Positions 3,168-49,707 of a stretch of 64,000 bases of DNA are shown in pieces. The DNA is taken from the sequence record LR756511.1, one strand, 5' to 3'. The stretch's first letter is position 1. Each line of letters starts with the position of its first letter. Position numbers and translations under genes: made by a program. The notes under the pieces were generated by a model. The model was not told where the DNA came from, searched no databases, and saw only the letters and a list, made by a program, of their open reading frames with translations.

Positions 3168-3425
3168 CTATTTTTTCTTCATCTTCTTCATGCGAAGGGG
3201 ACCGATATTGGCGAGGGCATTGCCTGTGCCTGAAGCGGCACCTGGAGGCATTGACCCTGCGTTACCACAATGTTTGGAGTAGTATGGATCGCAATTGTGC
3301 GGATGTAGCATATTGGGATTCACCCTGGAATTACCTTCATATGGCACCCCTGGATTACCCATAAGTCCTCCACCCTCACGGACTTGCAAAAATTCACGAA
3401 ATGTTTTCACATAGTTATGTATCAC
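3168..3425 (-). CDS. Small basic protein with capsid-targeting-like motif (putative internal head protein)
   Basis: VKTFREFLQVRE near the N-terminus and an MKKMKKK tail. Confidence 0.6.
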   Translation of the reverse strand: MIHNYVKTFREFLQVREGGGLMGNPGVPYEGNSRVNPNMLHPHNCDPYYSKHCGNAGSMPPGAASGTGNALANIGPLRMKKMKKK

Positions 3426-3463
3426 TGTGAGACTAAGCTTTCAGAAATTTTTCAGGAAACGAC

Positions 3464-3491
3464 TTGACAATAGAACAAACGCGCGTAAAGT
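3464..3491 (+). promoter_or_regulatory. Sigma70-type early promoter
   Basis: TTGACA-N16-TAAAGT upstream of the 3547 gene. Confidence 0.7.
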
Positions 3492-3546
3492 TAGTATATC
3501 GGTGTTAGTTGTTAGTTCCATCACAACTCTACAAGAGGTTTGGGAA

Positions 3547-4029
3547 ATGGAAAGCACATCGGCGTCGGAAGTCAAGGTTGGACAAGAGTTTGCGCAACCA
3601 AAGCCTGAAGAGATTAAGGCTGGGTCCGAGCAGAATCTGTTCGGCAATCTCGAAAGCGCGGTGAATGATGCAACGAGTCAGATTCGTCATTGCGACGAAC
3701 AGATCGCGTTGTGGAACCAGCGCAAACAATCGTATCAGACGAAAATGAACGAAATGCTCGACGGATTGCGCAAGCAATTCGGCAACGGGACGGCTCCAAA
3801 GCAAGCTTCCACTCCAAAAACTCGCGCCAAGAAGGGTAGCGGCGGCACGGTTCCAGAGCTTATCCGTGGTTTCCTTGAAGGCCACGGACCCGCTCGCACC
3901 CGTGACATTCGCAAGCATCTCTTGTCCAAGGGCAAGAAGACGAATCCAGGCGTTGCTCTCAGCCGCATGGTCAAGCAAGGTGAACTCAAGAACACCGAGC
4001 GCGGCACCTACCAAATCGCCAGCAAGTAA
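3547..4029 (+). CDS. Coiled-coil plus C-terminal winged-helix DNA-binding protein
   Basis: Heptad-like middle region. C-terminus IRGFLEGHGPARTRDIRKHL...VALSRMVKQGELKNTERGTYQI fits a wHTH with wing. GAGG RBS before ATG 3547. Confidence 0.7.
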   Translation: MESTSASEVKVGQEFAQPKPEEIKAGSEQNLFGNLESAVNDATSQIRHCDEQIALWNQRKQSYQTKMNEMLDGLRKQFGNGTAPKQASTPKTRAKKGSGGTVPELIRGFLEGHGPARTRDIRKHLLSKGKKTNPGVALSRMVKQGELKNTERGTYQIASK

Positions 4030-4036
4030 CATCAGC

Positions 4037-4079
4037 AATAAAAAGGAGCGGTGGCAAAATACCACCGCTCCTTTTTATT
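4037..4079. terminator. Bidirectional intrinsic terminator
   Basis: 18-bp perfect inverted repeat AATAAAAAGGAGCGGTGG/CCACCGCTCCTTTTTATT between convergent genes. Confidence 0.9.
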
Positions 4080-5006: not shown

Positions 5007-5104
5007 GTAGTTATATATTAACATTGGTAAATTTTAACCAATTTACCTTGAAATATTTTTGGAAGAAAATAGATATGGTTGAAATCTTTATTGGAGGATA
5101 TAAG

Positions 5105-5488: not shown

Positions 5489-5510
5489 GCAAAGAAATAG
5501 CCTTTCTAAT

Positions 5511-5555
5511 TAACAAAATGCTTGACGCATCGGATGTGCGTCAAGCATTTTGTTA
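5511..5555. terminator. Long hairpin/terminator between convergent genes
   Basis: 19-bp perfect inverted repeat TAACAAAATGCTTGACGCA/TGCGTCAAGCATTTTGTTA with a 7-nt loop. Confidence 0.8.
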
Positions 5556-5624
5556 TGTACGTAGAAAATGCCAGCAAAAGCTGGCATTTGGCGACCGCCA
5601 ATTATTCTATTAGCATCATTTCAT

Positions 5625-5783
5625 TCATTTTTTGTCTTTGGTCTTACCAAAGACTTTTTCTTTATGTTCCTCAGACTCGCCCTCTTCATCGTCGTCGTCT
5701 AAGTCCTTATGAAGTTTTTCTTCTTTTTCCTCTATATCGGCTTTTTCGCCTTTGCCCTCAAGAAAATCTTTCCAACTTTTCAT
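5625..5783 (-). CDS. Small highly charged protein with capsid-targeting-like N-terminus
   Basis: AAGGAGG RBS. Starts MKSWKDFLE, and the rest is K/E/D-rich. Confidence 0.65.
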   Translation of the reverse strand: MKSWKDFLEGKGEKADIEEKEEKLHKDLDDDDEEGESEEHKEKVFGKTKDKK

Positions 5784-5796
5784 AATAACCTCCTTA

Positions 5797-6071: not shown

Positions 6072-6611
6072 ATGGCAACTTTCAATGAATATCATTCAAT
6101 AAGAGAAGAATATGATACTCAAACCGAAATTTTGATGTTCGAACAAGAGCTTTTCGAGTGGAAGAAAACGCATCCAGGCAAAGACATATCCAAGAAAAAG
6201 AAGTCTGATCTGGTAAAACGTGCCCGCAGAGGCGAAGACGTTTTTGGTGGCGGCAAGAATTTCGAGAAAATCGAAAAGAGTGCTTCGAAACGTTATGGTT
6301 CTGAAGAAGCTGGCAAGCGCGTAGCTGGCGCAATCATGTGGAAAAAAGCCAAAGGCAAGCACATGACCAAGGAAGATGTTGACGATGTTATCTGGATCGT
6401 TGAAGATGACATGGAAGTAATTCTCGACCACGCTATTGAGGAACAACAACTCTTTACAGAAAAGAAGAAAAACTGGATTAAGGGTGCAATTAAACACCCT
6501 GGACGTTGTACTCCTATGTCCAAGCCAGGGTGTAAAGGTGCAGCTAGAGCTTTAGCAATTAGATTCAAACGCGGAGATATACACCAGGACAATTTAGAAA
6601 AAGATGAATAA
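6072..6611 (+). CDS. Basic putative internal head protein
   Basis: GAGGAG RBS. Starts MATFNEYHSIREE, has Lys/Arg-rich blocks and a WIKGAIKHPG motif. Confidence 0.65.
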   Translation: MATFNEYHSIREEYDTQTEILMFEQELFEWKKTHPGKDISKKKKSDLVKRARRGEDVFGGGKNFEKIEKSASKRYGSEEAGKRVAGAIMWKKAKGKHMTKEDVDDVIWIVEDDMEVILDHAIEEQQLFTEKKKNWIKGAIKHPGRCTPMSKPGCKGAARALAIRFKRGDIHQDNLEKDE

Positions 6612-6846
6612 GCTTGATTTTAAACTTTGGATCGAACACAGTAGGACAGGGGCGGGTAAACTAGCTTTATATCCGCCTCTGTATACTCAATACATGAATT
6701 ACCCACCACAAGATGTTGTGACGTGGAGTGCCGACGCCATTACTTACATGGACCCCGCCGACGTACAATTCAAAGCAATTGAAGGCAAATTTCAACCTTA
6801 TTTCTGGTATGATAAGGTCAATCGTTTCTTAAAGAATGCTCCCTAA
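6604..6846 (+). CDS. Hypothetical protein with capsid-targeting-like N-terminus
   Basis: Starts MNKLDFKLWIE and is coupled to the upstream gene. Confidence 0.6.
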   Translation: MNKLDFKLWIEHSRTGAGKLALYPPLYTQYMNYPPQDVVTWSADAITYMDPADVQFKAIEGKFQPYFWYDKVNRFLKNAP

Positions 6847-8182: not shown

Positions 8183-8183
8183 A

Positions 8184-15121: not shown

Positions 15122-15142
15122 TGGTTCACCACTAAATAGGTT

Positions 15143-15475
15143 GTGAAATCATTCAAGGTTTGGATGGAAGAACTAGCTGGTCATATCGCAAATGATATCA
15201 TAGGAATATTGCGCAAAGCAAGCGATAAAATTGGACAATACGGAGGTGTAGATCGAAATGCCGCCGATGAAGCGGACTCACTGCTTCGCCAAGCTAGAGG
15301 CTACTACAACCTTGCCGCCAACGAAGGCGCGGATCGAAACATCGTATTTCAACTTGCTCGTCTTGCCAATGAATGCAAGGCTATACGCCATTTAGACCCT
15401 GAAAAGAACACTAAAATACAGCAAATTCAAGCTGATATTGAAGCAGTAATTAAGATTTTAAATCATCGTCTTTAG
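15143..15475 (+). CDS. Helical protein with capsid-targeting-like N-terminus
   Basis: Starts MKSFKVWMEE. CTAAATA lies 4 nt before the GTG. Confidence 0.65.
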   Translation: MKSFKVWMEELAGHIANDIIGILRKASDKIGQYGGVDRNAADEADSLLRQARGYYNLAANEGADRNIVFQLARLANECKAIRHLDPEKNTKIQQIQADIEAVIKILNHRL

Positions 15476-24135: not shown

Positions 24136-24189
24136 ATCTTATTTAGAAGAATTGTACAACAAAAATGCCCCACAAAGGGGCACATTTAT

Positions 24190-29952: not shown

Positions 29953-30621
29953 CTACCTCGCTAAGTACTTGTTAGTTGATTCCTTAATTAAACCACTGAG
30001 AGCGGCTATTACCACTTCTTTGTTATTGGTATATACGCGACTACTTGTATTTTTCTCAAAACTATTGTAATTATTTTGAGGAATATAACTTTCACGCTTA
30101 CCACTCACTATTCTCTCTTGGAACGCAGCAGGCGTCGATGGATCAGCAACAGCATCAAACGTTATTAGTCTGTAACCTTCACCAATAACTAATATGCCGT
30201 TCTCATTCGTCTTACCATTGCCTACACCACGACTACTCATTCCAACTCTGATGCCGCCCTGTAATAACGCATTCAACTGGCGACCCATTGCTGTTCCTAA
30301 AATCTCTCCTTCACCCATAAGAATATGACCTTCCCACCATAGCTTAGTAATGATGTGAGAAGCATCTTTAAAGTGAATGATACTATCCTGTGGATGGTCT
30401 AATTCACCAAGCAATCCACGGGCTTTAACAACTTCCTGCAAGCGCTGGACATTCTCATCCAACACCGCGTATGGATACATTCTCTTATTTTTGTTAACAA
30501 TCTCTGCTTCCTGAAGCTTACCACGGAATTTGAGAAGACCCTTTTCAAGATTAGATTCTTTAAGGTCTATCTCAAATCCGAAGCAATCAAATTCATTCAG
30601 CAGCATTACGCCTTCTCTCAT
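29953..30621 (-). CDS. gp21: Prohead maturation protease, T4 gp21-like
   Basis: NKNKRMYP, LGELDHP, GMSSRGVG and ITFDAVADPS. Confidence 0.95.
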   Translation of the reverse strand: MREGVMLLNEFDCFGFEIDLKESNLEKGLLKFRGKLQEAEIVNKNKRMYPYAVLDENVQRLQEVVKARGLLGELDHPQDSIIHFKDASHIITKLWWEGHILMGEGEILGTAMGRQLNALLQGGIRVGMSSRGVGNGKTNENGILVIGEGYRLITFDAVADPSTPAAFQERIVSGKRESYIPQNNYNSFEKNTSSRVYTNNKEVVIAALSGLIKESTNKYLAR

Positions 30622-30638: not shown

Positions 30639-32489
30639 TTACTTATCGACAACCAAATCGTCTTCTTTACCATGATTCATCTTGTACGAATCTGGCGTTT
30701 CAGCCTTCGGAACATATGGGTTCTGTAGGTTTGGCCAAGTATCCTTGCCCTGCCAACGGCTCCAATCATCGTCGCCGTCCTTATCGGCACCCTTCTCACC
30801 CTTCATAGTCCATGTCGCGTCCGCGCCCTTAGAGTAAGGATTGCGTAATGCTGGCCATGTATCGTCATTGCCCCAATTGCCCCATGCGTCATTGCGCATT
30901 TCTTTATCAAGGCCCGACTTGTAGCTCTTGCCGTCACTTACTGGCAATTCGCTACCCCAATCACCACTGAAGTCACTTGCTGGGGCATATGGCTGCTTTG
31001 CCTTCTTAGCCATGTCTGGATGGTCGCCACTTACGGTCATATAAGGCGTGTTCGAAACCTTCCAATCTTCCGACTCAAGGTTCGTTTCAACCAAATTGCT
31101 TAGCCATGCTGCAACGTCTGCCGCAAGCTCTAAGGTTGGTTCTTCTGTCTGATCGACAACACCCTTAAGTTCCTTCAAGAACGAATTTGTTTCGCCCATC
31201 AAGAACTCATTACCTTCTTCGTGAGCCATCTTATAAACTTCTACTAAAGCATTATAAAGATCAACGAATACCTGCATTTCAAGCTTCGTGTTCTCATCAA
31301 CAAACTTGTAGAACTTGCCTACAACATTCTGGAACTCTATATACTTGTCTTCGGTATTTTCGCTCTTAACACCAGCAAGATTCATAACTCTCTCAACTCG
31401 TTCGTCATAAGTCTCTACTGCTGTTCTTAGAATTGCCTCAGCCATGAAAACGCATGTCTGATCTTCGTAATTCGTTTCGCCAACGGTGTCCAAAGCGGTT
31501 GCAATAGCTTCAGATAGTTCGCCCTGTGTTAAATAGATGACGTTTGGCCATCTTACAACAACAGCGTCTAGAACTTCTTGTAACTTCTTATTGTCAGATA
31601 GTGCGTTGCACTTACGTAAATCAGCCATTGCCTTGCAGAAATTAACGTCCTCTGCTAGATTCTTCATCTTAGCACGCAAGATCATAAGATCGGTATTTAG
31701 AGTCTTCCAATTGAATGCAAGAATCTTACCTTCGTTACGAGTCTTTGTGTCTGGAATGCGAACTGCAACAACGTTGCCACTATCATCTTTCTTAATTTCC
31801 GAATCGCGTGCGGTTGGACCAAATTCCTGAAAATCCACGTAATTAAATACGTTTTCAGCAATGTTATACCACTCGCGCATCTTACGCTTGCCCTGTGGCT
31901 TCATTCTAATGTGAACATGAGTACCAGGACCAAACCTCTTCTTCAAGTTCTCGCGTTCCAGCTTGGCGCGCTGCTTTTCTGAAGAAGAAAGACTTGCTTG
32001 ACTCTTCTGCTTGCCTAAAACGCGAGCGCGAATCTGGCCTGGAGTCTGTGGGCCGCGTTTCTTATGAGGCTTGTTCTTTTTATCGACATATGCCTTATTT
32101 TCTGTCCAGCTACGGCGAACGTGTGGAAGCGCCACATATTCCTTAAATGCAGCATCTGCGCCTGTGCTGTTTTCCTTTAGAACTTCGTTAAACATCTTGC
32201 GAAGAACTTCACGGGATTTTTCATTTTCCGTGGATTCGTCAATTACTAACTGCTCAATATTCTCAAATGTGACGTTCTTGTTTTTGATTTGATAACCTGC
32301 GTTGATGTAAGTTCCATCAATTGTTTGGTAAGTCACACTGTTCTCATTGAAGCAATGAAGAGTCAAAAGTTCCTCGCCCAAAGCCTTCGCCAAAACATCC
32401 GCTGCTTCTACCAATTCTTTTTCTGCTGTCGTCAGCGATGTTTCACTAATCTTCTGGAAAACATCATAATTGATTAGTTTTCTTTTCAT
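30639..32489 (-). CDS. Putative prohead core protein
   Basis: 616 aa at the gp67/gp68 position before the protease, with several (L/I)xE sites and a basic internal block. Confidence 0.6.
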   Translation of the reverse strand: MKRKLINYDVFQKISETSLTTAEKELVEAADVLAKALGEELLTLHCFNENSVTYQTIDGTYINAGYQIKNKNVTFENIEQLVIDESTENEKSREVLRKMFNEVLKENSTGADAAFKEYVALPHVRRSWTENKAYVDKKNKPHKKRGPQTPGQIRARVLGKQKSQASLSSSEKQRAKLERENLKKRFGPGTHVHIRMKPQGKRKMREWYNIAENVFNYVDFQEFGPTARDSEIKKDDSGNVVAVRIPDTKTRNEGKILAFNWKTLNTDLMILRAKMKNLAEDVNFCKAMADLRKCNALSDNKKLQEVLDAVVVRWPNVIYLTQGELSEAIATALDTVGETNYEDQTCVFMAEAILRTAVETYDERVERVMNLAGVKSENTEDKYIEFQNVVGKFYKFVDENTKLEMQVFVDLYNALVEVYKMAHEEGNEFLMGETNSFLKELKGVVDQTEEPTLELAADVAAWLSNLVETNLESEDWKVSNTPYMTVSGDHPDMAKKAKQPYAPASDFSGDWGSELPVSDGKSYKSGLDKEMRNDAWGNWGNDDTWPALRNPYSKGADATWTMKGEKGADKDGDDDWSRWQGKDTWPNLQNPYVPKAETPDSYKMNHGKEDDLVVDK

Positions 32490-32597: not shown

Positions 32598-32945
32598 ATG
32601 ACTCAAAAAGTGGCGGACAAAATGAAAAGATTTTTGGACTATTACCGATTTAGAGAAGACGAGAACCAGGACCATGAACCAGAGAAGGGCTTAGGCGATA
32701 TAAACGCCATGCCTAATGACGATGAAATTCTTATTAAATTGGCAAAAATGGCGGTAAGTCGTCACCAAGAACGCATGATAGAGTTCTTCAGTGCGCTTAG
32801 CCGACATGATGATGATATTAAACGACTTCTAGACAAGTACAAGGATAACCGCAGAGGCTATCCTATTAACGACACCCGCCCTAAAGGAAGTGATGATAAA
32901 GATGTGATTGCGCCAAACCAAGCTGATATGAGCGATCCAATTTAG
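32598..32945 (+). CDS. Hypothetical protein with capsid-targeting-like motif
   Basis: MKRFLDYYRFRE near the N-terminus, TATATA upstream. Confidence 0.6.
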   Translation: MTQKVADKMKRFLDYYRFREDENQDHEPEKGLGDINAMPNDDEILIKLAKMAVSRHQERMIEFFSALSRHDDDIKRLLDKYKDNRRGYPINDTRPKGSDDKDVIAPNQADMSDPI

Positions 32946-34781: not shown

Positions 34782-35014
34782 TATTTATTTACTTTAGACA
34801 AAAAGATTGGGTCTTTCTCGCTTTCTTCATTAATCGCCAGAACAGCGTCAACAGAACAGTGTGGACATAGCGCAGTGTCATTGTCTCTATCCGTCCACTC
34901 TTTAATCTCTGAGACATTAAAAATCCGTAAGCAATGGTAACAGGCGCACTCTGTTACCATTTTCAAACGATCTTTATTATGTATGGCAAGCATTGGTGCC
35001 ATTCGAATTTCCAT
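34772..35014 (-). CDS. Small zinc-binding protein
   Basis: CACYHC ... ALCPHCSVDAV. Confidence 0.7.
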   Translation of the reverse strand: MEIRMAPMLAIHNKDRLKMVTECACYHCLRIFNVSEIKEWTDRDNDTALCPHCSVDAVLAINEESEKDPIFLSKVNKYWF

Positions 35015-37587
35015 TAATCCCCCAAACTAGAATGGTCTATATCTTCAACATCCTGTTCACTTTCGTAGTCCTGAATTTCCATATCATATTTGATAATGTC
35101 TGCTTCCGTTGCCTTTGGAACTGGCTTCGCCTGTCCCGCTGGTGGTAACATATCAGGCGCCGCTTGCTGAGGCGGTGGAGGCATTGGTGGTGGACCCCCT
35201 GGCCCTCCCACTGGCGCTGGTCCCATCGGCGGACCCCCTGGCGGTGGCCCACCTGGAGCCGCCCCTGGAGGCATTCCCTCTGGACCGAGATTTGGATTTG
35301 GTCCCCCTGGTTGCCCACCAATCTCCTGCTCGCCCTGTCCTGGCAAACCAATACCTAATATCGTTGGGTTCTGAGCAATGATTTGTAACTTCAAATCCTC
35401 TAGCTTTTGAACCTTCACCCTCGCCATCATTTCCTTGGCTTCATCCTCATTATACTTCATCCACTTTGTCAAAATGTCAAAGTCAGACAGTAATTGAGAA
35501 CCCTTCAAACTATTCGCGTTATTAATTCTATTTGTTACAATTTCCGCACGACTTAACTCACGCCAATCGCTCGGCGGCGTCATCTTTATGCTCAAATCTT
35601 CATAAGCTTCAGGAGGGAATCCTCTAAGCTTCAAATGCTTGTCGGCCACCTGATACAAAGCTTCCTCTAAATGAGCCTGTAAACGCTCAATCATACGAGC
35701 AAACTTAACGTCCTGAGCAGACAAAGTAATTCTTGTCGCATTTGGGTCTTCCAAGGAAAAGTAGTTCTTTGGGAAATTCAAAGCTGTATATAACTTGTTT
35801 CTAAAATATACAGCATCATCAATTTCGCCCAAATTCTGTGCGCCTGGAAGTGTATCAATCCTCGTATTTGACTGCGGACGAATTGGTATCCAAATATCCT
35901 CGTCCTGTGCTGGCGCGTGCCAACGTTCTTCCACCACAGATGGTCCGCCCTGAGCAAACTGATTCCTTGGAACCTTCTTCTTTCGGAATTGTTCCTTAAT
36001 ACGATCCATGAACGCTTCCGCCTTATATGGCGGCAATTGTCCCACATCAACGTAAAAACAACGGCGCTCAGGTGCGCGCGTGAGTCGGTAAATAACCATT
36101 GCGTCTTCCATCATACGCAACTGATGGGCTGGACCACGGGCAGCTTCAATTAAGCTAACACCATATGGATAGAAAGTCTTTCTGTAATCTCCAATCTTTA
36201 GGTGAATAACCTGCTCTGGTGAGAAACGAATTGCCGTAGATTGCTGCAATTCCGCTTCCGTTGCCGATGAAATTGGAGCTTTTACAATCGACTGATAATC
36301 AGGCGCATCCTTCGATTGCTGATACTCTAGAACCTTACCTTTTACCGTTTCAATACGAAACATCGTTTCTGGCGGAAGGTCATTAATCTTGTATACACCT
36401 TCCTTTGGATTATCAGGATTAATGATGATTTCCCAAAACTCATCGCCCTTAATGAAAAGTCGCTTCGCTTTGTCCCACATCGTTCTCTGATCGAGATTCA
36501 ACATATCACGATGGAAGAACAAGAAATTTAACTCATCCTGAATTTCCTTATCCGCACAATGAATCTTAAATACCTTACCTTCCTCATCCTTCTGACAATT
36601 ATGCATAACACAAGATGTTGTGCAGAAGTTCTTATGTTTCTCTACCGATAGGTCATAAACAGCCATTTTCTTATGAGGAAGAACACCAATAATACGTCTA
36701 CGATCTGGCTTCTTGGCAAGATACTTTAATTCTTGATAAGAGAAACCGTGTTTCTTCAACCAAAGAGAGATATTCAGCCATGTCATACCAATCTGGCGAG
36801 AGATTTGTTTAGTGGTCAAACCATTCCCAATTAGGCGGGCAACATGATTCACTCGTTCATATTGCTCCTGTCTTTCACCCAAACGCCACTCGTCAAGGAA
36901 TTGACGTTCGTGCAACCAACCTTGATTAAATGTGAAGATTCGTGGGAATTGATTCGTTTTAATCTTTGTTTGATGCTGATTGGCGTTTACACGGTAGAAT
37001 GGCATCAACTCGTCGCCAAACTTCAAATCTCCCGCAAAACACCATTCTCCATCACGCTTTAAAATGCGATGGTCTGGAGTAATTGTCTCCACTACCCCGT
37101 TATCAAGAACGATTTGCACGGTTTCATCGAATTTAACGAAACGTGGAGAATATGCCCAACCAATCGTATAATCCTCTGTTTCAAAGTCATAACAATAAAC
37201 AGGGAACTTCTCTCCCGCTTTATTGTTCGCTAACCATTCAATTGTTTTTGGGCCATGATAAACGGTAGAAATAAGGGTGTCGCCTGCCACGCAAGCTTCA
37301 TCCGCAAAAACCGTCATCGCCATCTCAATTTCAGGAATACTCAGAACTAGTCTGTCATACTCCTTATATCGGTTTGTTCTGTTTGTCGAGCTAGTCGTAT
37401 CGACCAGTTCGTTTTGGACTCTAATGAAAGCTCCACCTTGAGACATTGACTCAAGGTTTCGCAAGTCCATGATTGAGTCGGGACTTGTAACGCCCGCACT
37501 CGGAAAATCACGCACGTCCGACTTTTTACTCAAAGGGTCTTGCGTGAAAGCATACGTAAAAATCTTAAATAAATCGTACCAAGCCAT
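35014..37587 (-). CDS. gp20: Portal protein, T4 gp20-like, intein-containing, with Pro/Gly-rich C-tail
   Basis: LRMMEDAMVIYRLTRAPERRCFYVDVGQLP, EDIWIP, IDTLPGAQNLGEIDD and YFRNKLYTALNFP. Confidence 0.95.
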   Translation of the reverse strand: MAWYDLFKIFTYAFTQDPLSKKSDVRDFPSAGVTSPDSIMDLRNLESMSQGGAFIRVQNELVDTTSSTNRTNRYKEYDRLVLSIPEIEMAMTVFADEACVAGDTLISTVYHGPKTIEWLANNKAGEKFPVYCYDFETEDYTIGWAYSPRFVKFDETVQIVLDNGVVETITPDHRILKRDGEWCFAGDLKFGDELMPFYRVNANQHQTKIKTNQFPRIFTFNQGWLHERQFLDEWRLGERQEQYERVNHVARLIGNGLTTKQISRQIGMTWLNISLWLKKHGFSYQELKYLAKKPDRRRIIGVLPHKKMAVYDLSVEKHKNFCTTSCVMHNCQKDEEGKVFKIHCADKEIQDELNFLFFHRDMLNLDQRTMWDKAKRLFIKGDEFWEIIINPDNPKEGVYKINDLPPETMFRIETVKGKVLEYQQSKDAPDYQSIVKAPISSATEAELQQSTAIRFSPEQVIHLKIGDYRKTFYPYGVSLIEAARGPAHQLRMMEDAMVIYRLTRAPERRCFYVDVGQLPPYKAEAFMDRIKEQFRKKKVPRNQFAQGGPSVVEERWHAPAQDEDIWIPIRPQSNTRIDTLPGAQNLGEIDDAVYFRNKLYTALNFPKNYFSLEDPNATRITLSAQDVKFARMIERLQAHLEEALYQVADKHLKLRGFPPEAYEDLSIKMTPPSDWRELSRAEIVTNRINNANSLKGSQLLSDFDILTKWMKYNEDEAKEMMARVKVQKLEDLKLQIIAQNPTILGIGLPGQGEQEIGGQPGGPNPNLGPEGMPPGAAPGGPPPGGPPMGPAPVGGPGGPPPMPPPPQQAAPDMLPPAGQAKPVPKATEADIIKYDMEIQDYESEQDVEDIDHSSLGD
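36598..37293 (-). mobile_element. Intein (232 aa) in the portal gene, no intact homing endonuclease
   Basis: Block A CVAGDTLI, block B TPDHRIL, block F VYDLSVEKHKNF, terminal HN followed by +1 Cys. Confidence 0.92.
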
Positions 37588-39233: not shown

Positions 39234-39407
39234 TTACCACCCAAATTCTTTAAGTAATTGGTCATGAGAAATTGATCTGTACGGTGGCCAGTTCTTTTCC
39301 TGCATCGCAAGCTGCATCGCCCCCTCTAATTCAAATAACGCCGCCTCTACTTGCGGTGGGTCTTGCTTTAGCAATGCTTCTATTGTTTGTAATTTCTGAA
39401 TTACCAT
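39234..39407 (-). CDS. 57-aa protein ending in the terminase C-terminal motif (not in ORF track)
   Basis: GGAG RBS, ATG overlapping the terminase's last codons. MVIQKLQTIEALLKQDPPQVEAALFELEGAMQLAMQEKNWPPYRSISHDQLLKEFGW. Confidence 0.65.
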   Translation of the reverse strand: MVIQKLQTIEALLKQDPPQVEAALFELEGAMQLAMQEKNWPPYRSISHDQLLKEFGW

Positions 39408-41242
39408 CCGAACTCCTTAAGCAGATTATCTAGCCTTCTTCTAAAGTCAAACGCCACCCCAGCCATTACTTCTTCATCTACAGTATGAAGCGGATTCAAT
39501 ATTCGTTCATTGTCTTCGAAAAAGCTCCTTGGTGCGCCCTCAATAATCTCTCTCTTAATTTCCTCATAGCTAGCCGACTTAAGTGGCTCTGATAGCTCCC
39601 TTGGCATACCAGCACCCATCGGCATCTCCCTCAAAATGCTATCTCGGACGAACAAAGCAATAGCCGTCGCCATTACCGCATCATCATGCTCACCCTTGAC
39701 AGCACCAATCTTACCCGTTTGTGGATTGTGAACGAAAGTGTTAATTTCATTAACAAGTCTCTTACTGTTGATCTTAATGGCACCATTGATGCAATGCTGC
39801 TGTAAAGCTTCTAAAATCGTTAATCTGTTAGCAACTGTAACCTTGATGCCAGCCTTCGGTGTCTTGGAAGTCGCCTTTTCAAAATAAATATTGTCATAAA
39901 ACAAGTGATGCTGGAGATTAGTCAAAACCGCACCACCCGAACCGTTACCTTCTACAACCACCAAAGCATGATTGTAGTAAATCGCTATTTCATTAAGAAT
40001 TTGTGCGAACTGATATGGTTGGATTTTATTGCTATAAAATTCGGCAACTTGTTCCATCGTGCCATTATCGAACACCTGGAACACACTGTTGTCACCTTCC
40101 TCACCGACACCTTCCGCTGTATCAACACCGATAGTATATTCGTGACCGTCTACAGGCTCTTTCCATACCCATAGTGCGCCTTCACGCTCCCAACTATCAT
40201 CAAATTCCTGCACTTCGTCTTCATCATCCTCCTCATTCGCAAGAAGCGTGTTTACCCACTTCTTAAACAGCTTACGCTTTGGAGGATTGTTTTGGGTAGA
40301 TTCCACCAATTTAGCCACAATATGAGAAGGAATATACGTTTCACCAGAACCAAGGAAACTTCTTAAAACTTCCTGCAACCAACCCTTTTCACCAAGCTGT
40401 GCTTTTTGGTCAGCGATCCAAGCAGGATCATTATACTCTGGATGGTCTGTATAATCTAAGTCTATGATGTGGAATGGCTTACCGATACGCTTGGACTTAT
40501 GGTACATTTTCTCATACCAGTTACCCAAACCATTAACCGTAGAAACAACGATGCAATTACCACCACCAGACAACGTTGGATAAATAGCTTTCCAGTGGTC
40601 ATCCATGTCTGGAATAAATGCCGCTTCGTCTAAGATTAAATACGTAATAGCAAGACCACGGGCACGCTCTGGAGTACCAAAGGTCATCTTTCCGCCTGTC
40701 TCTGGAAAATGCTTTTGGTGATCGTTCCACTTTCCGTCATTCTTTGGTGGCTGCAACCACTTTGGCAAATTCTTAACAGCCGTGTTAACAATTTCACCAG
40801 CCGTAATAGCTTCCGTGTCCGTCTTCGACAATAAAACTATCTGTTGATCTAATTTAAATAAACAACGCCATAAACACCACAATTCCGCGAGTGTAGTTAA
40901 ACCACCCTGACGGAATTTGGATATGAGGTTGAAACGATATTTTTCAAAATCTTCAATAACACCATGCTGATACTTGTAGCAAATAAAACGAACTAAACCG
41001 CGTCTAGGGTGAAGAATCTTGACATACTTATTGGCAAAATAGAAAAAGTCCAATGCGCATTTCGCATATTCAAGACGACAACGATTAACGTCGTAATTGT
41101 TATAATCATCTACGGTTTCATCTGGATCAATCTCTAATTCGTAATGAGTGATGTTGTAATAAGGCGCTGGATATCTTGCCTTATAGTATTCCTCTAAACT
41201 CTTGTACTTGCCTCTCCATAAAGAATCTTTATAATTAGCCAT
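39401..41242 (-). CDS. gp17: Terminase large subunit, T4 gp17-like
   Basis: YQHGVI, KFRQGGLTT (Walker A variant), LILDEAAFI, VVSTVNG, nuclease IGVDTAEG and HDDAVMA. Confidence 0.95.
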   Translation of the reverse strand: MANYKDSLWRGKYKSLEEYYKARYPAPYYNITHYELEIDPDETVDDYNNYDVNRCRLEYAKCALDFFYFANKYVKILHPRRGLVRFICYKYQHGVIEDFEKYRFNLISKFRQGGLTTLAELWCLWRCLFKLDQQIVLLSKTDTEAITAGEIVNTAVKNLPKWLQPPKNDGKWNDHQKHFPETGGKMTFGTPERARGLAITYLILDEAAFIPDMDDHWKAIYPTLSGGGNCIVVSTVNGLGNWYEKMYHKSKRIGKPFHIIDLDYTDHPEYNDPAWIADQKAQLGEKGWLQEVLRSFLGSGETYIPSHIVAKLVESTQNNPPKRKLFKKWVNTLLANEEDDEDEVQEFDDSWEREGALWVWKEPVDGHEYTIGVDTAEGVGEEGDNSVFQVFDNGTMEQVAEFYSNKIQPYQFAQILNEIAIYYNHALVVVEGNGSGGAVLTNLQHHLFYDNIYFEKATSKTPKAGIKVTVANRLTILEALQQHCINGAIKINSKRLVNEINTFVHNPQTGKIGAVKGEHDDAVMATAIALFVRDSILREMPMGAGMPRELSEPLKSASYEEIKREIIEGAPRSFFEDNERILNPLHTVDEEVMAGVAFDFRRRLDNLLKEFGW

Positions 41243-44748: not shown

Positions 44749-45069
44749 ATGAGTAGAGAAGAAAATTTTTGGGCACGCACAAGTCCAGTTGGCTGCGTTG
44801 TAGAATTAGCTTGTCGTTACGACGACGAGGACGAAGAAGACGACGATGATGATTACGAGGATGAGGACGATGATCTAGACGACGACGACGATGATTTTGA
44901 TGACGATGAGGACGATGATCTAGACGATGAGGACGATGATGATGATTTTGATGACGATGAGGACGATGATCTAGACGACGACGATGATGATTTTGATGAT
45001 GAGGACGAGGATTATGACGACGATCTAGATGAGGACTATGATCTAGACGACGACGACGATGAAGATTAG
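44749..45069 (+). CDS. Extremely acidic low-complexity protein
   Basis: AAGGAG RBS. After residue 24 almost only Asp/Glu, punctuated by L/F/Y. Confidence 0.75.
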   Translation: MSREENFWARTSPVGCVVELACRYDDEDEEDDDDDYEDEDDDLDDDDDDFDDDEDDDLDDEDDDDDFDDDEDDDLDDDDDDFDDEDEDYDDDLDEDYDLDDDDDED

Positions 45070-45239
45070 TTTTTCTTCTGCTTCTTCATTGGCTTTTTGT
45101 TTCCTGGCAATGGAGTAAGGTCAAGAGTTGCATTACCTGTCCTCTTACGTTCCATGTCGGGGAATTCTGAAGCTGGCTCTGGTTCCATAACCGCTCTGCC
45201 AAATATAGATTCCGCCCATTGTTTGAAATCGAGTCTCAT
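45066..45239 (-). CDS. Small protein with capsid-targeting-like N-terminus and basic tail
   Basis: MRLDFKQWAES...KKPMKKQKKN. TAAATA lies 5 nt before the ATG. Confidence 0.6.
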   Translation of the reverse strand: MRLDFKQWAESIFGRAVMEPEPASEFPDMERKRTGNATLDLTPLPGNKKPMKKQKKN

Positions 45240-45249
45240 TAATATATTT

Positions 45250-47156: not shown

Positions 47157-47210
47157 GTACGGTCCTTTGTTAGTATTATCGACACTTTAATAGAAAAAGG
47201 AATATGAAAA

Positions 47211-47825
47211 ATGGGATACGATGAAGAATTTTTTGAAAAATACCGAAATTACTTACAAGAAGAAACCGTAAGAAGAGTCCATGACGGCATGTTTAGAACC
47301 TTCTTTTCATTTTCCCAAGGTCGTTTGCCCAACCTACAGAATATAATCGACGCAAAACCACCTATTGAAGTTATTGATTTGGGATGCGGACTTTGCCAAG
47401 AATTCAAGCTTTATGGATGGTATAATTTTTACTTTGGTGTAGATAAAATGCCAGTTGGGGGTGATTACTTTGAGCAAGCTGATTATCTGACCTATCCTAT
47501 CACTAGGTCCGACAATACCTTTGTCAGTCTGTTCTCTACAGAATGCTGCTTGTCCGCTGAAGACAAATATGCTTTTTACAACAAACTATTCTCCGAAAAT
47601 CCTAACATTCGGTACGGCTTAGTCTCTGGATTTTATTACAAGGATAGGGTAGAAGATAAAAAGGTAGAAGAGGCAGGCGGATTGGTAAGCTACCAAACGA
47701 TTGAGAATCCGCAAAATCACCGATCCAAGTGGTTCGATGAATTTAGAGTTTACGCTGACGTGCCATCCGCATTATTCGGCCCTAACGTTGTAGAAGTTTG
47801 GAAATTCTTTAACCGACGATGGTAG
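47211..47825 (+). CDS. SAM-dependent methyltransferase-like protein
   Basis: VIDLGCG, YFGVD and EQADY motifs. Confidence 0.65.
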   Translation: MGYDEEFFEKYRNYLQEETVRRVHDGMFRTFFSFSQGRLPNLQNIIDAKPPIEVIDLGCGLCQEFKLYGWYNFYFGVDKMPVGGDYFEQADYLTYPITRSDNTFVSLFSTECCLSAEDKYAFYNKLFSENPNIRYGLVSGFYYKDRVEDKKVEEAGGLVSYQTIENPQNHRSKWFDEFRVYADVPSALFGPNVVEVWKFFNRRW

Positions 47826-48832
47826 ATTTTGATAGCTTTGTTGATTGGTGCGAAGATCGTTTTAATGGCGATGTTGTCGTCAAAGGGAAAGAAATCCGCA
47901 TCAATTCAATTTTTGCTCCTGAAGACAATAAACACCACCTTTGGTGCAGTCCATCGGGCGGAAAGCATCACCGCGACTACGGCGTTTACCATTGCTTTAA
48001 GACTGACAAGAAAGGCACTCTTATCAGTCTCATCATGGAAGTCGATAATTGTAGTTACGATGAAGCTAAAGAAATACTGACTGGCGCCACCTCCATTGGC
48101 GATTTAGAGGATTTGATTGACGATTTCTTCAAGAACAAAGAAGAGGAAATTGAAAAGCAGAAGAAAGCCAAATTACAACTTCCTCCTGATTGCGTTCTTA
48201 TTAGTAGCCTTCCGCCAAACAATATTGTTCGAATCAAAACCGAGAGCTACTTAAAAGATCGGAAGCTGCCTATTGACGGACTATATTTCGGTACCGATGA
48301 GGACTATCATGACAGGATTATCATTCCATATTATGATGCCGAAGGCGTGTTAATCTACTTCAATTCTCGCGCATTAAATGATGATGGTTTACGCTATCTA
48401 GGCCCAAAGAAAGAATGCGGCGTTGGCAAGCTGGATGTCCTGTATGTCCCCAAATGGCCCGCCAAAGGCTCAAGAGTCTATCTGACGGAAGGTGAATTTG
48501 ACGCCCTGACACTTTACTTATGTGGATTTAATGCGGCAGCGTGCGGTGGTAAGACATTAGGTGAAAAGCAAATCGAGTATCTTCGCGGTTATAAGATTTG
48601 TTTAGCCTTAGATGAAGATGCGGCTGGGTTTTCTGGAATTATCGAAATGAGTCGTAAACTGATTGCAAATCAGTTTACCGACACTACCTTCGTGCGCCCG
48701 CCCAAGGGATTAAAGGATTGGAATAAGATGCTTAAAAAGTTCAAGCCTGAGATTATTCAGGCTTGGATTCAACAAAACGAAAAACCATTCGATGATTTTA
48801 CTGCTGAGATGTTACTTAACAATTTGGAATGA
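47819..48832 (+). CDS. DNA primase (DnaG/gp61-like, TOPRIM)
   Basis: YLKDR, RIIIPY, LTEGEFDAL, LALDEDAAG and KDWN. Confidence 0.92.
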   Translation: MVDFDSFVDWCEDRFNGDVVVKGKEIRINSIFAPEDNKHHLWCSPSGGKHHRDYGVYHCFKTDKKGTLISLIMEVDNCSYDEAKEILTGATSIGDLEDLIDDFFKNKEEEIEKQKKAKLQLPPDCVLISSLPPNNIVRIKTESYLKDRKLPIDGLYFGTDEDYHDRIIIPYYDAEGVLIYFNSRALNDDGLRYLGPKKECGVGKLDVLYVPKWPAKGSRVYLTEGEFDALTLYLCGFNAAACGGKTLGEKQIEYLRGYKICLALDEDAAGFSGIIEMSRKLIANQFTDTTFVRPPKGLKDWNKMLKKFKPEIIQAWIQQNEKPFDDFTAEMLLNNLE

Positions 48833-49360
48833 TATAGCAATCCTTTTCCCGTCCTGTTGGATATTAGTTCTTTCGCCAATCTTTACCTTGAACATTTGGG
48901 AAGCTAATATCTTATATTTGTTGATTAAATCTTGGTTTACTTCTCTATTCTTGCCAGCATTCCAGCCTTTTCCAAACGTTTGACTAGGGATAAACTTAAT
49001 GGTTATTTGATCGTTCTGAACAATAGCGGTTGGTTGTCTTAAATCCTTACCCAATGATTGTTCCTGATTCTGTTGTGCTACGGCTGCTGGTTGCGCTTGT
49101 GCTGTCGAAGGTTGAGACATACCACCCATTAGACCACCAGCCATAGCTAAAGGTCCAGCCACATATTTACCTAACCAATTCTCGTCTAAATCTTCTTTAT
49201 GATTTTCCTCAAGCCACTCTTTAAAACCTTTAACTTTGTGCTTTTTCTTAGGAAGCTTCTTATAATTGGTTTTGTTGGCCCACTCTTCGCAATCGACCTT
49301 CCCACCGAATCCACCCGTTGCGAAACAGGCAGATGATTGTTTCTTACTTTTAAATGGCAT
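48812..49360 (-). CDS. Putative internal head protein with hydrophobic Gly/Ala segment
   Basis: Basic N-terminus, then VKGFKEWLEE...DLDE followed by NWLGKYVAGPLAMAGGLMGGM. Confidence 0.65.
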   Translation of the reverse strand: MPFKSKKQSSACFATGGFGGKVDCEEWANKTNYKKLPKKKHKVKGFKEWLEENHKEDLDENWLGKYVAGPLAMAGGLMGGMSQPSTAQAQPAAVAQQNQEQSLGKDLRQPTAIVQNDQITIKFIPSQTFGKGWNAGKNREVNQDLINKYKILASQMFKVKIGERTNIQQDGKRIAISFQIVK

Positions 49361-49368
49361 TAGTCTCC

Positions 49369-49707
49369 TTATGGCATATCATTAGGTGGAAATAACTTCT
49401 TTTTCTTCTTCTCCGCTTCCATTAAGTCTCTCTGTGCTACGAAATCAGCAAAGTTGCTTACTTCATTTTTAAACTTCTCTTTCTTGTGCGGAGTTCCAGA
49501 AGTGGTATGAGGCTGTTCCTTATAATGAGGGATATCACCCTCTTCCTTCTTTTTGGTAAAGACAGCATAAGGACACAACTTTCCGCCTTTTTTCGGCTTT
49601 CCTTTATGTTTGCACGCTTCTTTACTGAATTTCTCTGGATGATGGTCTAAGGCCGCTTTAATCGTTCCTCGCCAACCCTTATACGCTTTCTTATCTGGTT
49701 CTGGCAT
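49369..49707 (-). CDS. Lys-rich putative internal head protein
   Basis: CTAAATA 7 nt before the ATG. Highly basic, with NFADFVAQRDLME near the C-terminus. Confidence 0.65.
   Translation of the reverse strand: MPEPDKKAYKGWRGTIKAALDHHPEKFSKEACKHKGKPKKGGKLCPYAVFTKKKEEGDIPHYKEQPHTTSGTPHKKEKFKNEVSNFADFVAQRDLMEAEKKKKKLFPPNDMP

What the first reader, a model, noticed from the sequence alone, without database searches (positions are those of the whole stretch)
3168..49707. Family of about ten unrelated proteins carrying a T4-like capsid-targeting motif
Seen: VKTFREFLQVRE (3425), MKSWKDFLE (5783), MATFNEYHSIRE (6072), MNKLDFKLWIE (6604), MKSFKVWMEE (15143), MEFREWFRSAE (24135), MDFKEWYFINE (25964), MLTWTEFLE (26461), MKRFLDYYRFRE (32598 gene), MRLDFKQWAE (45239), and internal VKGFKEWLEE (49360 gene). 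The consensus is roughly (F/W)-x-(E/D)-(F/W/Y)-x(1-4)-E on otherwise unrelated bodies. Established: T4 internal proteins start with a 10-residue capsid-targeting sequence (IPIII MKTYQEFIAE) that directs packaging into the prohead and is removed by gp21 after a Glu. A gp21-like protease is in this window. Inference: this phage tags a dispersed and expandable cargo set, including enzymes, for packaging and injection with the DNA. Most of these genes also have the late-promoter motif.
Basis: partly seen in the sequence, partly recalled or inferred. Interest (0 to 1): 0.85.

Follow-up and report, generated by a model that had tools for sequence, protein, structure and literature searches.

The report
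Expanded T4-type capsid-targeting tag family
A 595-kb uncultured phage with a T4-type head carries, on about fifty unrelated proteins, the same short N-terminal label that phage T4 uses to load internal proteins into its capsid, so its packaged and probably injected protein cargo can likely be predicted from sequence, although no experiment has shown this yet.

Summary
The window is bases 496001-560000 of LR756511.1, an unannotated 595,163-bp uncultured phage. It holds a T4-type head module: gp20 portal, Peptidase_S77/gp21 protease, scaffold-like protein, gp23 capsid protein and gp17 terminase.

Ten of the eleven quoted peptides sit at plausible N-termini. One, at 49234, is internal.

Genome-wide, aromatic-x-[DE]-aromatic starts at residue 4 in 23 of 991 predicted proteins (1.9 expected, p=1e-17). 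About 50 proteins carry the tag in registers 3-5. The same enrichment appears in 80 related metagenomic loci.

Conservation is at the peptide level, and the protein bodies are unrelated.

A matrix trained only on this phage's N-termini ranks T4 gp61.1, IPI, IPII and IPIII as the top four of 257 T4 proteins. The register (aromatic 4 and 7) matches the residues shown experimentally to target IPIII.

Tags are usually followed by hydrophobic-x-Glu. The tagged bodies are basic (median pI 9.0 against 6.2). About 45% sit behind a T4-late-promoter-like element 3-7 nt before the start codon.

Cargo includes a NADAR (anti-DarT-type) enzyme and a CCA-adding-type nucleotidyltransferase.

Packaging and cleavage remain untested. 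The call is a new member of a known kind, greatly expanded.

The parts
3168..3410 (-). 80-aa ORF with tag (V/M)KTFREFLQVRE at a GTG start
   Evidence: PSSM 19.7 bits, the second-best hit in the six-frame scan. GTG start without a Shine-Dalgarno sequence. The motif-blind caller preferred the ATG at 3362. No Pfam or PHROG match.
5625..5783 (-). 52-aa acidic protein with tag MKSWKDFLE
   Evidence: TAAGGAGG ribosome-binding site 6 nt upstream. Chosen by the motif-blind caller. PSSM 12.9.
6072..6611 (+). 179-aa basic protein (pI 9.2) with tag MATFNEYHSIRE
   Evidence: GAGGAG ribosome-binding site. Caller start. pI. No family match.
6604..6846 (+). 80-aa protein with variant tag MNKLDFKLWIE (register 6, Leu in place of the acid)
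   Evidence: The ortholog in L091 starts MKFLNFRLWLTE, so the variant is conserved.
15143..15475 (+). 110-aa ORF with variant tag (V/M)KSFKVWMEE at a GTG start
   Evidence: PSSM 13.3. CTAAATAG ends 3 nt before the GTG. The caller preferred the ATG at 15164.
20905..24135 (-). 1076-aa protein with tag MEFREWFRSAE. A conserved N-terminal module of about 350 aa is followed by a variable C-terminus.
   Evidence: CTAAATA lies 4 nt before the ATG. There are 222 homologs. At least 34 of 104 keep M[NEKR]F[KR]xW[FL]..E immediately before the domain anchor NEDFKTQ. In the AlphaFold model the tag (residues 1-15) has pLDDT below 50, outside the confident core.
24504..25964 (-). 486-aa basic protein with tag (GTG) MDFKEWYFINE and a C-terminal phosphoribosyltransferase-like segment
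   Evidence: AGGAGG ribosome-binding site. The start overlaps the NADAR stop codon by 1 nt. Pfam Pribosyltran 2.9e-7, residues 428-478. FINE|G resembles the capsid protein site LFNE|I.
25964..26461 (-). 165-aa NADAR enzyme with tag MLTWTEFLE
   Evidence: Pfam NADAR 2.3e-19; the domain begins at residue 19. Two untagged NADAR paralogs elsewhere start their domain at residues 8-10. GTAAATA lies 4 nt before the ATG. An alternative start at 26425 is possible.
32622..32945 (+). 107-aa acidic protein with tag MKRFLDYYRFRE. It is conserved in the head module, between the portal and protease genes.
   Evidence: 29 distinct orthologs keep MK[TSR]Fx[DEQ][YF]..[LMV][KRN]E at or near the N-terminus. Its position is analogous to T4 genes 67/68.
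45066..45239 (-). 57-aa basic protein with tag MRLDFKQWAE (register 5)
   Evidence: ATAAATA lies 5 nt before the ATG. PSSM 12.1.
48812..49360 (-). 182-aa protein with an internal copy of the motif (VKGFKEWLEE, residues 43-52, window 49205-49234)
   Evidence: Top PSSM hit at 21.8 bits, but there is no start codon. The N-terminal PFKSKKQ module is a separate 68-aa protein in L029.
29953..30621 (-). Prohead protease, T4 gp21 type
   Evidence: Pfam Peptidase_S77 2.5e-27 and PHROG 207 3.5e-46. phmmer against T4 gp21 gives 3.4e-23. The residues aligned to T4 gp21 His85 and Ser140 are conserved. The N-terminal MLLNE parallels T4 LLIE-9.
29018..29950 (-). 310-aa Glu/Lys-rich protein between protease and capsid genes; probable scaffold (gp22 position)
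   Evidence: Conserved in 79 of 80 related loci. No family match. The assignment rests on position and composition only.
27506..28981 (-). Major capsid protein, T4 gp23 type
   Evidence: Pfam Gp23 2.5e-86. The T4 cleavage site LTE|A aligns with the conserved L[FMI]NE|[IV].
30639..32489 (-). 616-aa conserved head-module protein of unknown role
   Evidence: Present in 61 related loci next to the protease. No informative family or PDB match.
35014..37587 (-). Portal protein, T4 gp20 type, interrupted by a mini-intein
   Evidence: Pfam Portal_T4 2.6e-73 and Intein_splicing 3.7e-8. The junctions read FADEA|CVAGDTLI and VMHN|C.
39401..41242 (-). Large terminase, T4 gp17 type
   Evidence: phmmer against T4 gp17 gives 1.3e-28.

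Best explanation
The motif is a T4-type capsid-targeting sequence (CTS): a propeptide of about 9-13 residues, M-x-x-[FWY]-x-[EDQ]-[FWY]-h, usually ending in hydrophobic-x-Glu.

Inferred mechanism, by analogy with T4 IPIII:
1. Late in infection the tag binds the scaffolding core of the assembling prohead.
2. The tagged protein is therefore enclosed by the gp23-type shell.
3. The gp21-type protease then cuts after the Glu and releases the mature, often basic protein inside the head.
4. The protein stays with the DNA and is probably delivered into the next host cell.

This phage lineage has put the tag on about 5% of its genes. Most encode small ORFan proteins. A few encode enzymes: a NADAR ADP-ribosyl hydrolase, a phosphoribosyltransferase-like protein, a CCA-adding/poly(A)-polymerase-type nucleotidyltransferase, and a 1076-aa protein of a widespread huge-phage family. 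Many of these genes have their own T4-late-like promoter element directly before the start codon.

Shown here: the motif, its N-terminal position, its peptide-level conservation, its sequence equivalence to the T4 IP tags, the head module, the Glu-site enrichment, the basic bodies, and the promoter-like element.

Inferred: binding to the core, cleavage, retention in the virion, and injection.
For: 1. N-terminal enrichment: 23/991 at residue 4 against 1.9 expected. In 80 related loci, 48/1088 at residue 4 after removing portals.
2. Sequence equivalence with T4: the regex finds IPI, IPII and IPIII in T4. A matrix trained on 23 tags of this phage ranks gp61.1, IPI, IPII and IPIII first among 257 T4 proteins, at 12.7-14.6 bits; the next scores 3.4 and the median is -12.
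3. Same register as the functional residues of IPIII: targeting depends on residues 4 and 7, processing on 8 and 10 (PMC9026906).
4. Peptide-level selection: Phe TTT 13 / TTC 12, Thr on all four codons, Leu on five codons, and F/W/Y interchange.
5. Hydrophobic-x-Glu with the Glu 5-8 residues after the first aromatic in 38/56 tags, against 19% of other N-termini and 24% after internal copies (p=6e-10). Position +7 is K, N or R in 24 of 41 tags and +8 is E in 13 of 41. The same h-N-E pattern occurs at the aligned capsid-protein maturation site and at the protease N-terminus.
6. A complete T4-type head module is present. The protease keeps the residues aligned to T4 His85 and Ser140.
7. Bodies are basic: median pI 9.0 against 6.2, p=2e-7. 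This property was not used to define the set.
8. The tag is an add-on. Only one of three NADAR paralogs has it, placed ahead of a complete domain. It is conserved across 29 orthologs of the head-module acidic protein and across many orthologs of the 1076-aa protein.
9. Different tagged genes occupy the hypervariable region next to the capsid gene in different relatives.
10. Association with a sense-strand upstream element [CA]TA[AGT]ATA that contains 7 of the 8 bases of the T4 late promoter: 25/60 genes with the element are tagged, odds ratio 21, p=2.5e-18. A gp55-like sigma factor with region 2 only is present.
Against: - There is no experimental datum for this phage or any close relative. 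The nearest cultured capsid protein is only 33% identical.
- T4 gp61.1 and gp57B carry the same N-terminus but, to my knowledge, are not established head proteins, so the tag is not sufficient evidence of packaging.
- Spacing of the Glu differs from T4: +5 or +8 from the first aromatic rather than +6. A third of the tags have no h-x-E site.
- The register varies, with the first aromatic at residue 3, 4, 5 or 6.
- Only about 45% of tagged genes have the promoter-like element, and its identity as a late promoter is itself an inference.
- The best-scoring copy in the window is internal.
- Several starts are ambiguous.
- The head region of the distant jumbo relative XacN1 shows no such enrichment, so the feature is not general to gp23-type jumbo phages.
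- The test for fewer membrane segments was not significant: 2/50 against 86/941.
Confidence: 0.65

Rival explanations
1. The tag is a short linear motif that docks these proteins onto some other common partner, such as a chaperone, a replication or transcription hub, or a regulated-proteolysis adaptor. In that case the proteins never enter the capsid, and the resemblance to the T4 tag reflects a shared but different function.
For: T4 gp61.1 (encoded among early genes) and gp57B have the same N-terminus and are not known to me as head proteins. Over half of the tagged genes lack the late-type element. The register is flexible.
Against: The only function ever demonstrated for this sequence is capsid targeting (PMC9026906). 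The tag co-occurs with a T4-type core and protease. It is followed by a protease-type Glu site. It marks a conserved gene inside the head module. Tagged genes cluster next to the capsid gene in relatives. The bodies are basic, like DNA-associated internal proteins.
Confidence: 0.17
2. The tag does bring the proteins into the prohead core, but they act only as assembly or scaffold accessories. They are degraded or expelled at maturation, like T4 gp22, gp67 and gp68, so they are not an injected cargo.
For: The conserved acidic 107-aa protein sits where T4 genes 67/68 lie. Many tagged proteins are very small, 52-80 aa.
Against: Enzymes with plausible early counter-defence roles carry the tag (NADAR, nucleotidyltransferase). 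Half of the bodies have pI above 9, like the retained T4 IPII and IPIII. The repertoire is hypervariable between relatives, as expected for host-interaction cargo rather than structural parts.
Confidence: 0.12
3. The conserved N-terminus is a by-product of an RNA- or DNA-level signal: an initial-transcribed or translation-initiation sequence of leaderless late mRNAs, or a mobile promoter-plus-start cassette.
For: There is a strong association with an element 3-7 nt before the start codon. Many tagged genes lack a Shine-Dalgarno sequence.
Against: Synonymous codons vary freely at every conserved position, and F/W/Y interchange needs different bases. 31 tagged genes lack the element and several have strong Shine-Dalgarno sites. 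35 genes with the element have ordinary N-termini. The T4 IP genes have the same peptide.
Confidence: 0.04
4. The pattern arises by chance, by mis-called starts, or from a single paralogous family.
For: Three of the eleven window instances depend on GTG starts, and three differ from my motif-blind start calls.
Against: Poisson p=1e-17 with motif-blind starts. Internal-Met control 1/2927. The enrichment is replicated in 80 independent loci. 64 BLAST clusters among 133 tagged proteins.
Confidence: 0.02

Closest known systems
Capsid targeting sequence of phage T4 internal proteins IPI, IPII and IPIII (Mullaney and Black 1996; reviewed in PMC9026906 and PMC3012670)
   Same: - An N-terminal tag of about 10 residues with aromatic residues at 4 and 7, Glu at 6, and a following hydrophobic-x-Glu site.
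- The T4 IPI N-terminus MKTFKEF is identical to the first seven residues of one protein of this phage (record 37675-37944).
- The two sets recognise each other by profile.
- Unrelated, fast-evolving, often basic bodies.
- Same head machinery: gp20, gp21, gp23.
   Different: - About 50 tagged genes (5% of the genome) against 3 known IPs in T4.
- Genes are dispersed over 595 kb.
- The first aromatic can be at residue 3-6.
- The Glu lies mostly at +5 or +8 rather than +6.
- Q, K, L or V are tolerated at the acidic position.
- Many genes have a promoter-like element directly abutting the start codon.
- No experimental proof.
N-terminal propeptides of T4 Alt, gp67, gp68 and gp24
   Same: Short N-terminal propeptides removed after Glu by gp21. 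Alt shows that a large enzyme can be cargo. Genes 67/68 lie between the portal and protease genes, like the tagged 107-aa gene here.
   Different: Their sequences (for example the Alt N-terminus) do not fit the aromatic-4/aromatic-7 pattern. A second subfamily of the 1076-aa protein family (MKLSHIFKDLL) may resemble this type, but that was not tested.
Ejection proteins of phiKZ, 201phi2-1 and SPN3US giant phages (PMC5694885)
   Same: Large sets of head-internal proteins processed after Glu by a gp21-related protease. A diverged protease paralog also exists; here it is record 242240-243133, with His85 replaced.
   Different: Most of the long propeptides described there exceed 100 residues (PMC5694885), and the cleavage motif is A/S-x-E. 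No short shared aromatic tag is described for them. Their head modules lack a T4-like scaffold.
Phage P1 Dar anti-restriction proteins packaged in the head (PMC9024508, PMC12810830)
   Same: Counter-defence proteins pre-loaded into the capsid and delivered with the DNA.
   Different: To my knowledge, incorporation there depends on an ordered set of protein-protein interactions (Hdf, DarA) and not on a common short N-terminal tag. I did not read those two papers here. The head lineage is unrelated.
T4 AdfN (gp30.3), a NADAR anti-DarT1 factor (PMC11825919)
   Same: Phage-encoded NADAR hydrolases in the T4 superfamily counter DNA ADP-ribosylation. This phage has three NADAR paralogs.
   Different: T4 AdfN is not described as packaged: the words capsid, virion and packaged do not occur in that paper. 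Here one paralog carries the capsid-targeting-type tag.

Membership tests
T4-type capsid targeting sequence (CTS) | Short propeptide (10-20 residues) at the extreme N-terminus | tested here: met
   The positional profile peaks at residues 3-4. 6 of the 8 best six-frame hits follow a start codon. One window copy is internal.
T4-type capsid targeting sequence (CTS) | Aromatic residues at positions 4 and 7, the targeting determinants of IPIII | tested here: met
   30 proteins are in exactly this register and about 20 more are shifted by one or two residues. The functional residues are taken from PMC9026906.
T4-type capsid targeting sequence (CTS) | Sequence similarity to the T4 IP tags | tested here: met
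   A matrix trained only on this phage ranks gp61.1, IPI, IPII and IPIII 1-4 of 257 T4 proteins.
T4-type capsid targeting sequence (CTS) | Ends in a gp21-type processing site, hydrophobic-x-Glu (positions 8-10 in IPIII) | tested here: met
   38/56 against 19-24% in controls. The spacing differs from T4 and a third of the tags lack the site. Actual cleavage was not tested.
T4-type capsid targeting sequence (CTS) | Encoded by a phage with a gp21-type protease, a scaffolding core, a gp23 shell and a gp20 portal | tested here: met
   The scaffold is assigned by position and composition only.
T4-type capsid targeting sequence (CTS) | Attached to unrelated, rapidly varying, often basic mature proteins | tested here: met
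   64 clusters among 133 proteins. Variable content next to the capsid gene. Median pI 9.0 against 6.2.
T4-type capsid targeting sequence (CTS) | Protein is made while proheads assemble (late expression) | tested here: inconclusive
   25/56 tagged genes have a T4-late-like element 3-7 nt upstream, and a gp55-like sigma is present. There are no transcript data.
T4-type capsid targeting sequence (CTS) | Tag is necessary and sufficient for incorporation into proheads, and is removed by the protease | not testable with these tools
   This needs virion proteomics or a reporter-fusion assay.
Peptidase S77 (T4 gp21 prohead protease), window 29953-30621 | Profile match above the curated threshold, and catalytic His and Ser present | tested here: met
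   Pfam 96.1 bits against a cut-off of 27. The residues aligned to T4 His85 and Ser140 are H and S. That these are the catalytic residues is from my own knowledge of the family.
T4 late promoter (TATAAATA read by gp55) | Conserved A/T-rich -10-type octamer upstream of late genes, on the sense strand, with a gp55-type sigma encoded | tested here: inconclusive
   [CA]TA[AGT]ATA occurs at 3.7 per kb upstream on the sense strand against 0.3-0.9 per kb elsewhere. ATAAATA equals bases 2-8 of the T4 octamer. A 177-aa region-2-only sigma matches a gp55 profile at 8.5e-6. No gp33 or gp45 homolog was found by phmmer. No transcription start data.

The most novel reading that the evidence does not exclude
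A whole clade of huge phages (related contigs up to 532 kb) uses the T4 capsid-targeting tag as a general, easily transferable address label, often coupled to a leaderless late-promoter cassette. On this reading, about 5% of the proteome is pre-loaded into the giant capsid and injected. That cargo would include ready-made counter-defence enzymes, such as a NADAR that could strip ADP-ribose from incoming DNA and a tRNA CCA-adding-type enzyme. The 'injectome' of uncultured huge phages could then be read directly from sequence.
Probability: 0.45. Interest if true: 0.8.

Novelty: new member of a known kind. Interest (0 to 1): 0.6.

Why it matters
Huge phages are known almost only from metagenomes, and most of their genes have no assigned role. 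If this tag works as it does in T4, it assigns a location (inside the capsid) and a timing (acting at the moment of DNA entry) to about fifty otherwise anonymous proteins in this genome, and to many more in its relatives. It also points to pre-packaged counter-defence, such as a tagged NADAR paralog beside two untagged ones.

The idea can be tested without culturing the phage, because the T4 reporter-packaging assay can take foreign tags. The tags also form a natural library of sequence variants for the T4 protein-delivery platform.

The idea that T4-like phages use the CTS to vary their capsid cargo is already in the literature (PMC9026906). What is new is the scale, the lineage and the cargo list. 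My literature searches found no paper that links capsid targeting sequences to huge or metagenomic phages.

Tried and rejected
- Looked for a close cultured relative with virion proteomics. The best capsid-protein match in 50,697 phage records is 33% identical (Microcystis phage Mel-JY01, Xoo-sp13, XacN1).
- Read 41 kb around the XacN1 head genes. No tag enrichment, only one internal KFSEYLAE in an 80-aa gene between portal and protease. I therefore did not pursue the XacN1 proteome.
- Pfam and PHROG scans of 30 tagged proteins gave almost nothing.
- PDB sequence searches of the 1076-aa, 486-aa and 616-aa proteins were uninformative.
- An AlphaFold model of the conserved 400-aa module of the 1076-aa protein (pLDDT 77.8) had no significant Foldseek match in PDB or BFVD, so its function stays unknown.
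- The test for depletion of membrane segments among tagged proteins was not significant.
- phmmer with T4 gp55, gp33, gp45, gp22, gp67, gp68 and the IPs found no direct homologs. gp55 was recovered only with a two-sequence profile.
- I could not confirm from the paper text that LR756511 belongs to the Al-Shayeb et al. 2020 data set.
- 47819-48832 (MVDFDSFVDW) is rejected as a family member: it is a DNA primase with the pattern at residue 7.
- The portal N-termini of relatives were excluded from the counts.

Full report
**Origin and setting.** The window is identical to bases 496001-560000 of LR756511.1, an unannotated 595,163-bp 'uncultured phage' record. I fetched the whole record in 13 pieces and called genes with a simple caller that knows nothing about the motif. 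It uses codon log-odds, a Shine-Dalgarno score and start-codon weights. It gave 991 genes at 88% coding density, 94 of them in the window.

The window contains a T4-type head module on the minus strand:
- gp17-type terminase at 39401-41242
- gp20-type portal at 35014-37587
- a conserved 616-aa protein at 30639-32489
- a Peptidase_S77 (gp21) protease at 29953-30621
- a 310-aa Glu/Lys-rich protein in the gp22 position at 29018-29950
- a gp23-type capsid protein at 27506-28981

The protease keeps the residues aligned to T4 gp21 His85 and Ser140. That these are the catalytic pair is from my own knowledge of the family.

**The observation, instance by instance.** All eleven peptides exist.
- Seven directly follow an ATG.
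- Three need GTG starts: 3410, 15143 and 25964. The last has an AGGAGG site and overlaps the upstream stop codon by one base.
- One, at 49234, is internal in the 182-aa ORF 48812-49360 and has no start codon, although it is the best-scoring copy in the window.
- Two, at 6604 and 15143, lack the acidic middle residue. The 6604 variant is conserved in an ortholog.
- In three cases my caller chose a different start. For the NADAR gene and the 3168-3425 ORF, the alternative ribosome-binding site is formed by codons of the tag region, so both starts are conceivable.

**Is it more than chance?** Genome-wide, [FWY]-x-[DE]-[FWY] begins at residue 4 in 23 of 991 proteins and at residue 3 in 8. The internal rate is 0.0019 per position, or 1.9 expected (p=1e-17 and 7e-4).
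- Allowing Q at the acidic position and registers 3-5 gives 50 proteins.
- Near-variants with K, H, G, S, L or V at that position also exist, so 50 is conservative.
- Windows starting at an internal Met score above 6 bits once in 2927, against 29 in 991 for N-termini.
- A matrix trained only on genes outside the window, run over all six frames of the window, puts 6 of its 8 best hits 2-4 codons after a start codon (p=1e-4).
- In 80 related loci fetched through the capsid protein (78-92% identity, contigs up to 532 kb), the pattern starts at residue 4 in 48 and at residue 3 in 20 of 1088 proteins, against about 2 expected, after portal proteins are removed.

**Peptide, not nucleic acid, and not one family.** At the conserved positions, synonymous codons vary freely: Phe TTT 13 / TTC 12, Thr on four codons, Leu on five. 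F, W and Y also replace each other. The 133 tagged proteins of the genome and its relatives fall into 64 BLAST clusters, most of them singletons.

**Comparison with T4, done with fetched sequence and not from memory.** I read the T4 genome record. In T4 the same regex at residue 4 finds IPI, IPII, IPIII, gp61.1 and gp57B (5 of 257, with 0.4 expected). A matrix trained only on 23 tags of the huge phage ranks T4 gp61.1, IPI, IPII and IPIII first to fourth of 257 T4 proteins, at 12.7-14.6 bits. The next protein scores 3.4 and the median is -12.

The review PMC9026906 reports that the first ten residues of IPIII suffice for encapsidation. Targeting depends mainly on residues 4 and 7, and processing on residues 8 and 10. 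Those are exactly the two aromatic positions of the motif here and the position of the following hydrophobic residue. S77-type proteases cut after Glu (PMC5694885).

**Processing site.** A hydrophobic-x-Glu triplet, with the Glu 5-8 residues after the first aromatic, is present in 38 of 56 tags. It occurs in 19% of other N-termini and in 24% of internal occurrences of the aromatic pattern (p=6e-10). The logo shows K, N or R at +7 and E at +8.

Aligning the capsid protein with T4 gp23 places the known T4 cut (LTE|A, after residue 65) on a clade-conserved L[FMI]NE|[IV]. The protease N-terminus reads MLLNE, or MLL[LIV][ED] in relatives. This parallels LLIE-9 of T4 gp21 (PMC9026906). Tags such as FINE|G (486-aa protein), LKE, VRE and IRE fit the same pattern. 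This is consistent with cleavage but does not demonstrate it.

**Independent properties.**
- The bodies, with the first 14 residues removed, are basic: median pI 9.0 against 6.2, and half above 9 against 18% (p=2e-7). This matches the basic T4 internal proteins mentioned in PMC9026906.
- The tag is an add-on. The genome has three NADAR paralogs. In the two untagged ones the Pfam domain starts at residues 8-10. In the window copy it starts at residue 19, after MLTWTEFLE.
- The tag is conserved where the rest diverges. 29 distinct orthologs of the acidic 107-aa head-module protein (32622-32945) keep MK[TSR]Fx[DEQ][YF]..[LMV][KRN]E. At least 34 of 104 homologs of the 1076-aa protein keep M[NEKR]F[KR]xW[FL]..E right before the conserved domain.
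- The region downstream of the capsid gene is hypervariable among relatives and carries different tagged genes in each. This fits an exchangeable cargo set.

**Promoter-like element.** TAAATA ends 4-5 nt before the start codon far more often than at any other distance. [CA]TA[AGT]ATA is ten times denser in the 60 nt upstream of genes on the sense strand than elsewhere. Of the 60 genes with TA[AGT]ATA 3-7 nt before the start, 25 are tagged (odds ratio 21, p=2.5e-18).

ATAAATA is bases 2-8 of the T4 late promoter TATAAATA (my knowledge). A 177-aa sigma factor with region 2 only matches a gp55 profile. The spacing implies leaderless or nearly leaderless transcripts. That is an inference.

**Cargo.** Most tagged proteins have no Pfam or PHROG match, as expected for IP-like proteins. 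The exceptions are:
- the NADAR enzyme; NADARs of T4-type phages counter DarT1 (PMC11825919)
- a 486-aa protein with a phosphoribosyltransferase-like end, translationally coupled to the NADAR gene
- a 508-aa PolyA_pol/CCA-adding-type enzyme at record 580680-582206
- a DUF5661 protein
- the 1076-aa protein, whose conserved module is common on huge-phage contigs and is joined to variable repeat arrays

The model of that conserved module found no structural relative.

**Limits and rivals.** Nothing here measures packaging. T4 gp61.1 and gp57B show that the N-terminus alone is not proof. The Glu spacing and the register differ from T4. One copy is internal. The distant jumbo phage XacN1 shows no such enrichment near its head genes.

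The main rivals are another docking function for the tag, and core targeting without injection. An RNA-level signal and chance are effectively excluded.

**Verdict.** The interpretation as a T4-type capsid-targeting tag is supported by all available computational tests, and I put it at about 0.65. The mechanism is known, and the T4 literature already anticipates its use to vary capsid cargo. The scale, the lineage, the tagged enzymes and the promoter coupling are new. I found no paper linking the tag to huge or metagenomic phages.

Noticed in passing
genome-wide; in the window e.g. 24136-24146, 45240-45251, 15129-15142, 51741-51754: A sense-strand element [CA]TA[AGT]ATA ends 3-7 nt before the start codon of 60 genes, often without a Shine-Dalgarno site. 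This suggests T4-late-type promoters that produce leaderless or near-leaderless mRNAs. A gp55-like sigma factor with region 2 only lies at record 464287-464820.
   Followed up: partly
window 35014-37587 (-), about residues 101-330: The portal gene carries a mini-intein with junctions FADEA|CVAGDTLI and SCVMHN|CQKD. Portals of relatives are 833-861 aa or about 1257 aa, so inteins seem general in the clade, and some portals may hold a larger or a second one.
   Followed up: partly
related loci L014-L093, portal genes: Portal N-termini in relatives (MPIWSDFF...) have the same aromatic-4 / acid-6 / aromatic-7 register as the tag. The window portal starts MAWYDLF. This may reflect contact with the same site on the core, or it may be coincidence.
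   Followed up: no
window 52780-53799 (-): A 339-aa actin-fold protein matches the Pfam Volactin family over its full length (3.2e-67). An actin-like cytoskeletal gene in a huge phage.
   Followed up: no
LR756511.1 242240-243133 (L005:46243-47133, -): A second Peptidase_S77 paralog (Pfam 3e-8) in which the residue aligned to T4 His85 is Met, so it is probably inactive. It is followed by two tiny ORFs with tag-like N-termini (MNGWQEFYE, MKWYWEY). Diverged protease paralogs are also reported for SPN3US-like giant phages (PMC5694885).
   Followed up: partly
LR756511.1 230668-231105 and 240511-240993; window 25964-26461: Three NADAR paralogs in one genome, only one of them tagged. The NADAR start region also allows an untagged product from the ATG at 26425, so tagged and untagged forms of the same enzyme are conceivable.
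   Followed up: partly
T4 AF158101: 18966-19130 (gp61.1) and 73952-74410 (gp57B): Two T4 proteins not known to me as head proteins have CTS-like N-termini. gp61.1 begins MKTFKEFIKED and scores higher than the IPs with the matrix from the huge phage.
   Followed up: no
window 48812-49360 (-): The strongest motif copy in the window is internal. It lies behind a 42-residue PFKSKKQ-type module that is a stand-alone 68-aa protein in locus L029. The same module also heads two homologs of the 1076-aa family (P0038, P0056). It looks like a gene fusion upstream of a formerly N-terminal tag.
   Followed up: partly
homologs P0010-P0114 of window 20905-24135: A second, larger subfamily of the 1076-aa protein family starts MKLSHIFKDLL directly before the same domain. 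This different conserved 11-residue leader is loosely reminiscent of the T4 Alt N-terminus.
   Followed up: no
window 32942-34186 (-) and 57323-61300 (-): A GT1-family glycosyltransferase sits inside the head module between the portal and the 616-aa gene. Two large PKD-domain proteins (674 and 647 aa) lie further on; they may be decoration or fibre proteins.
   Followed up: no
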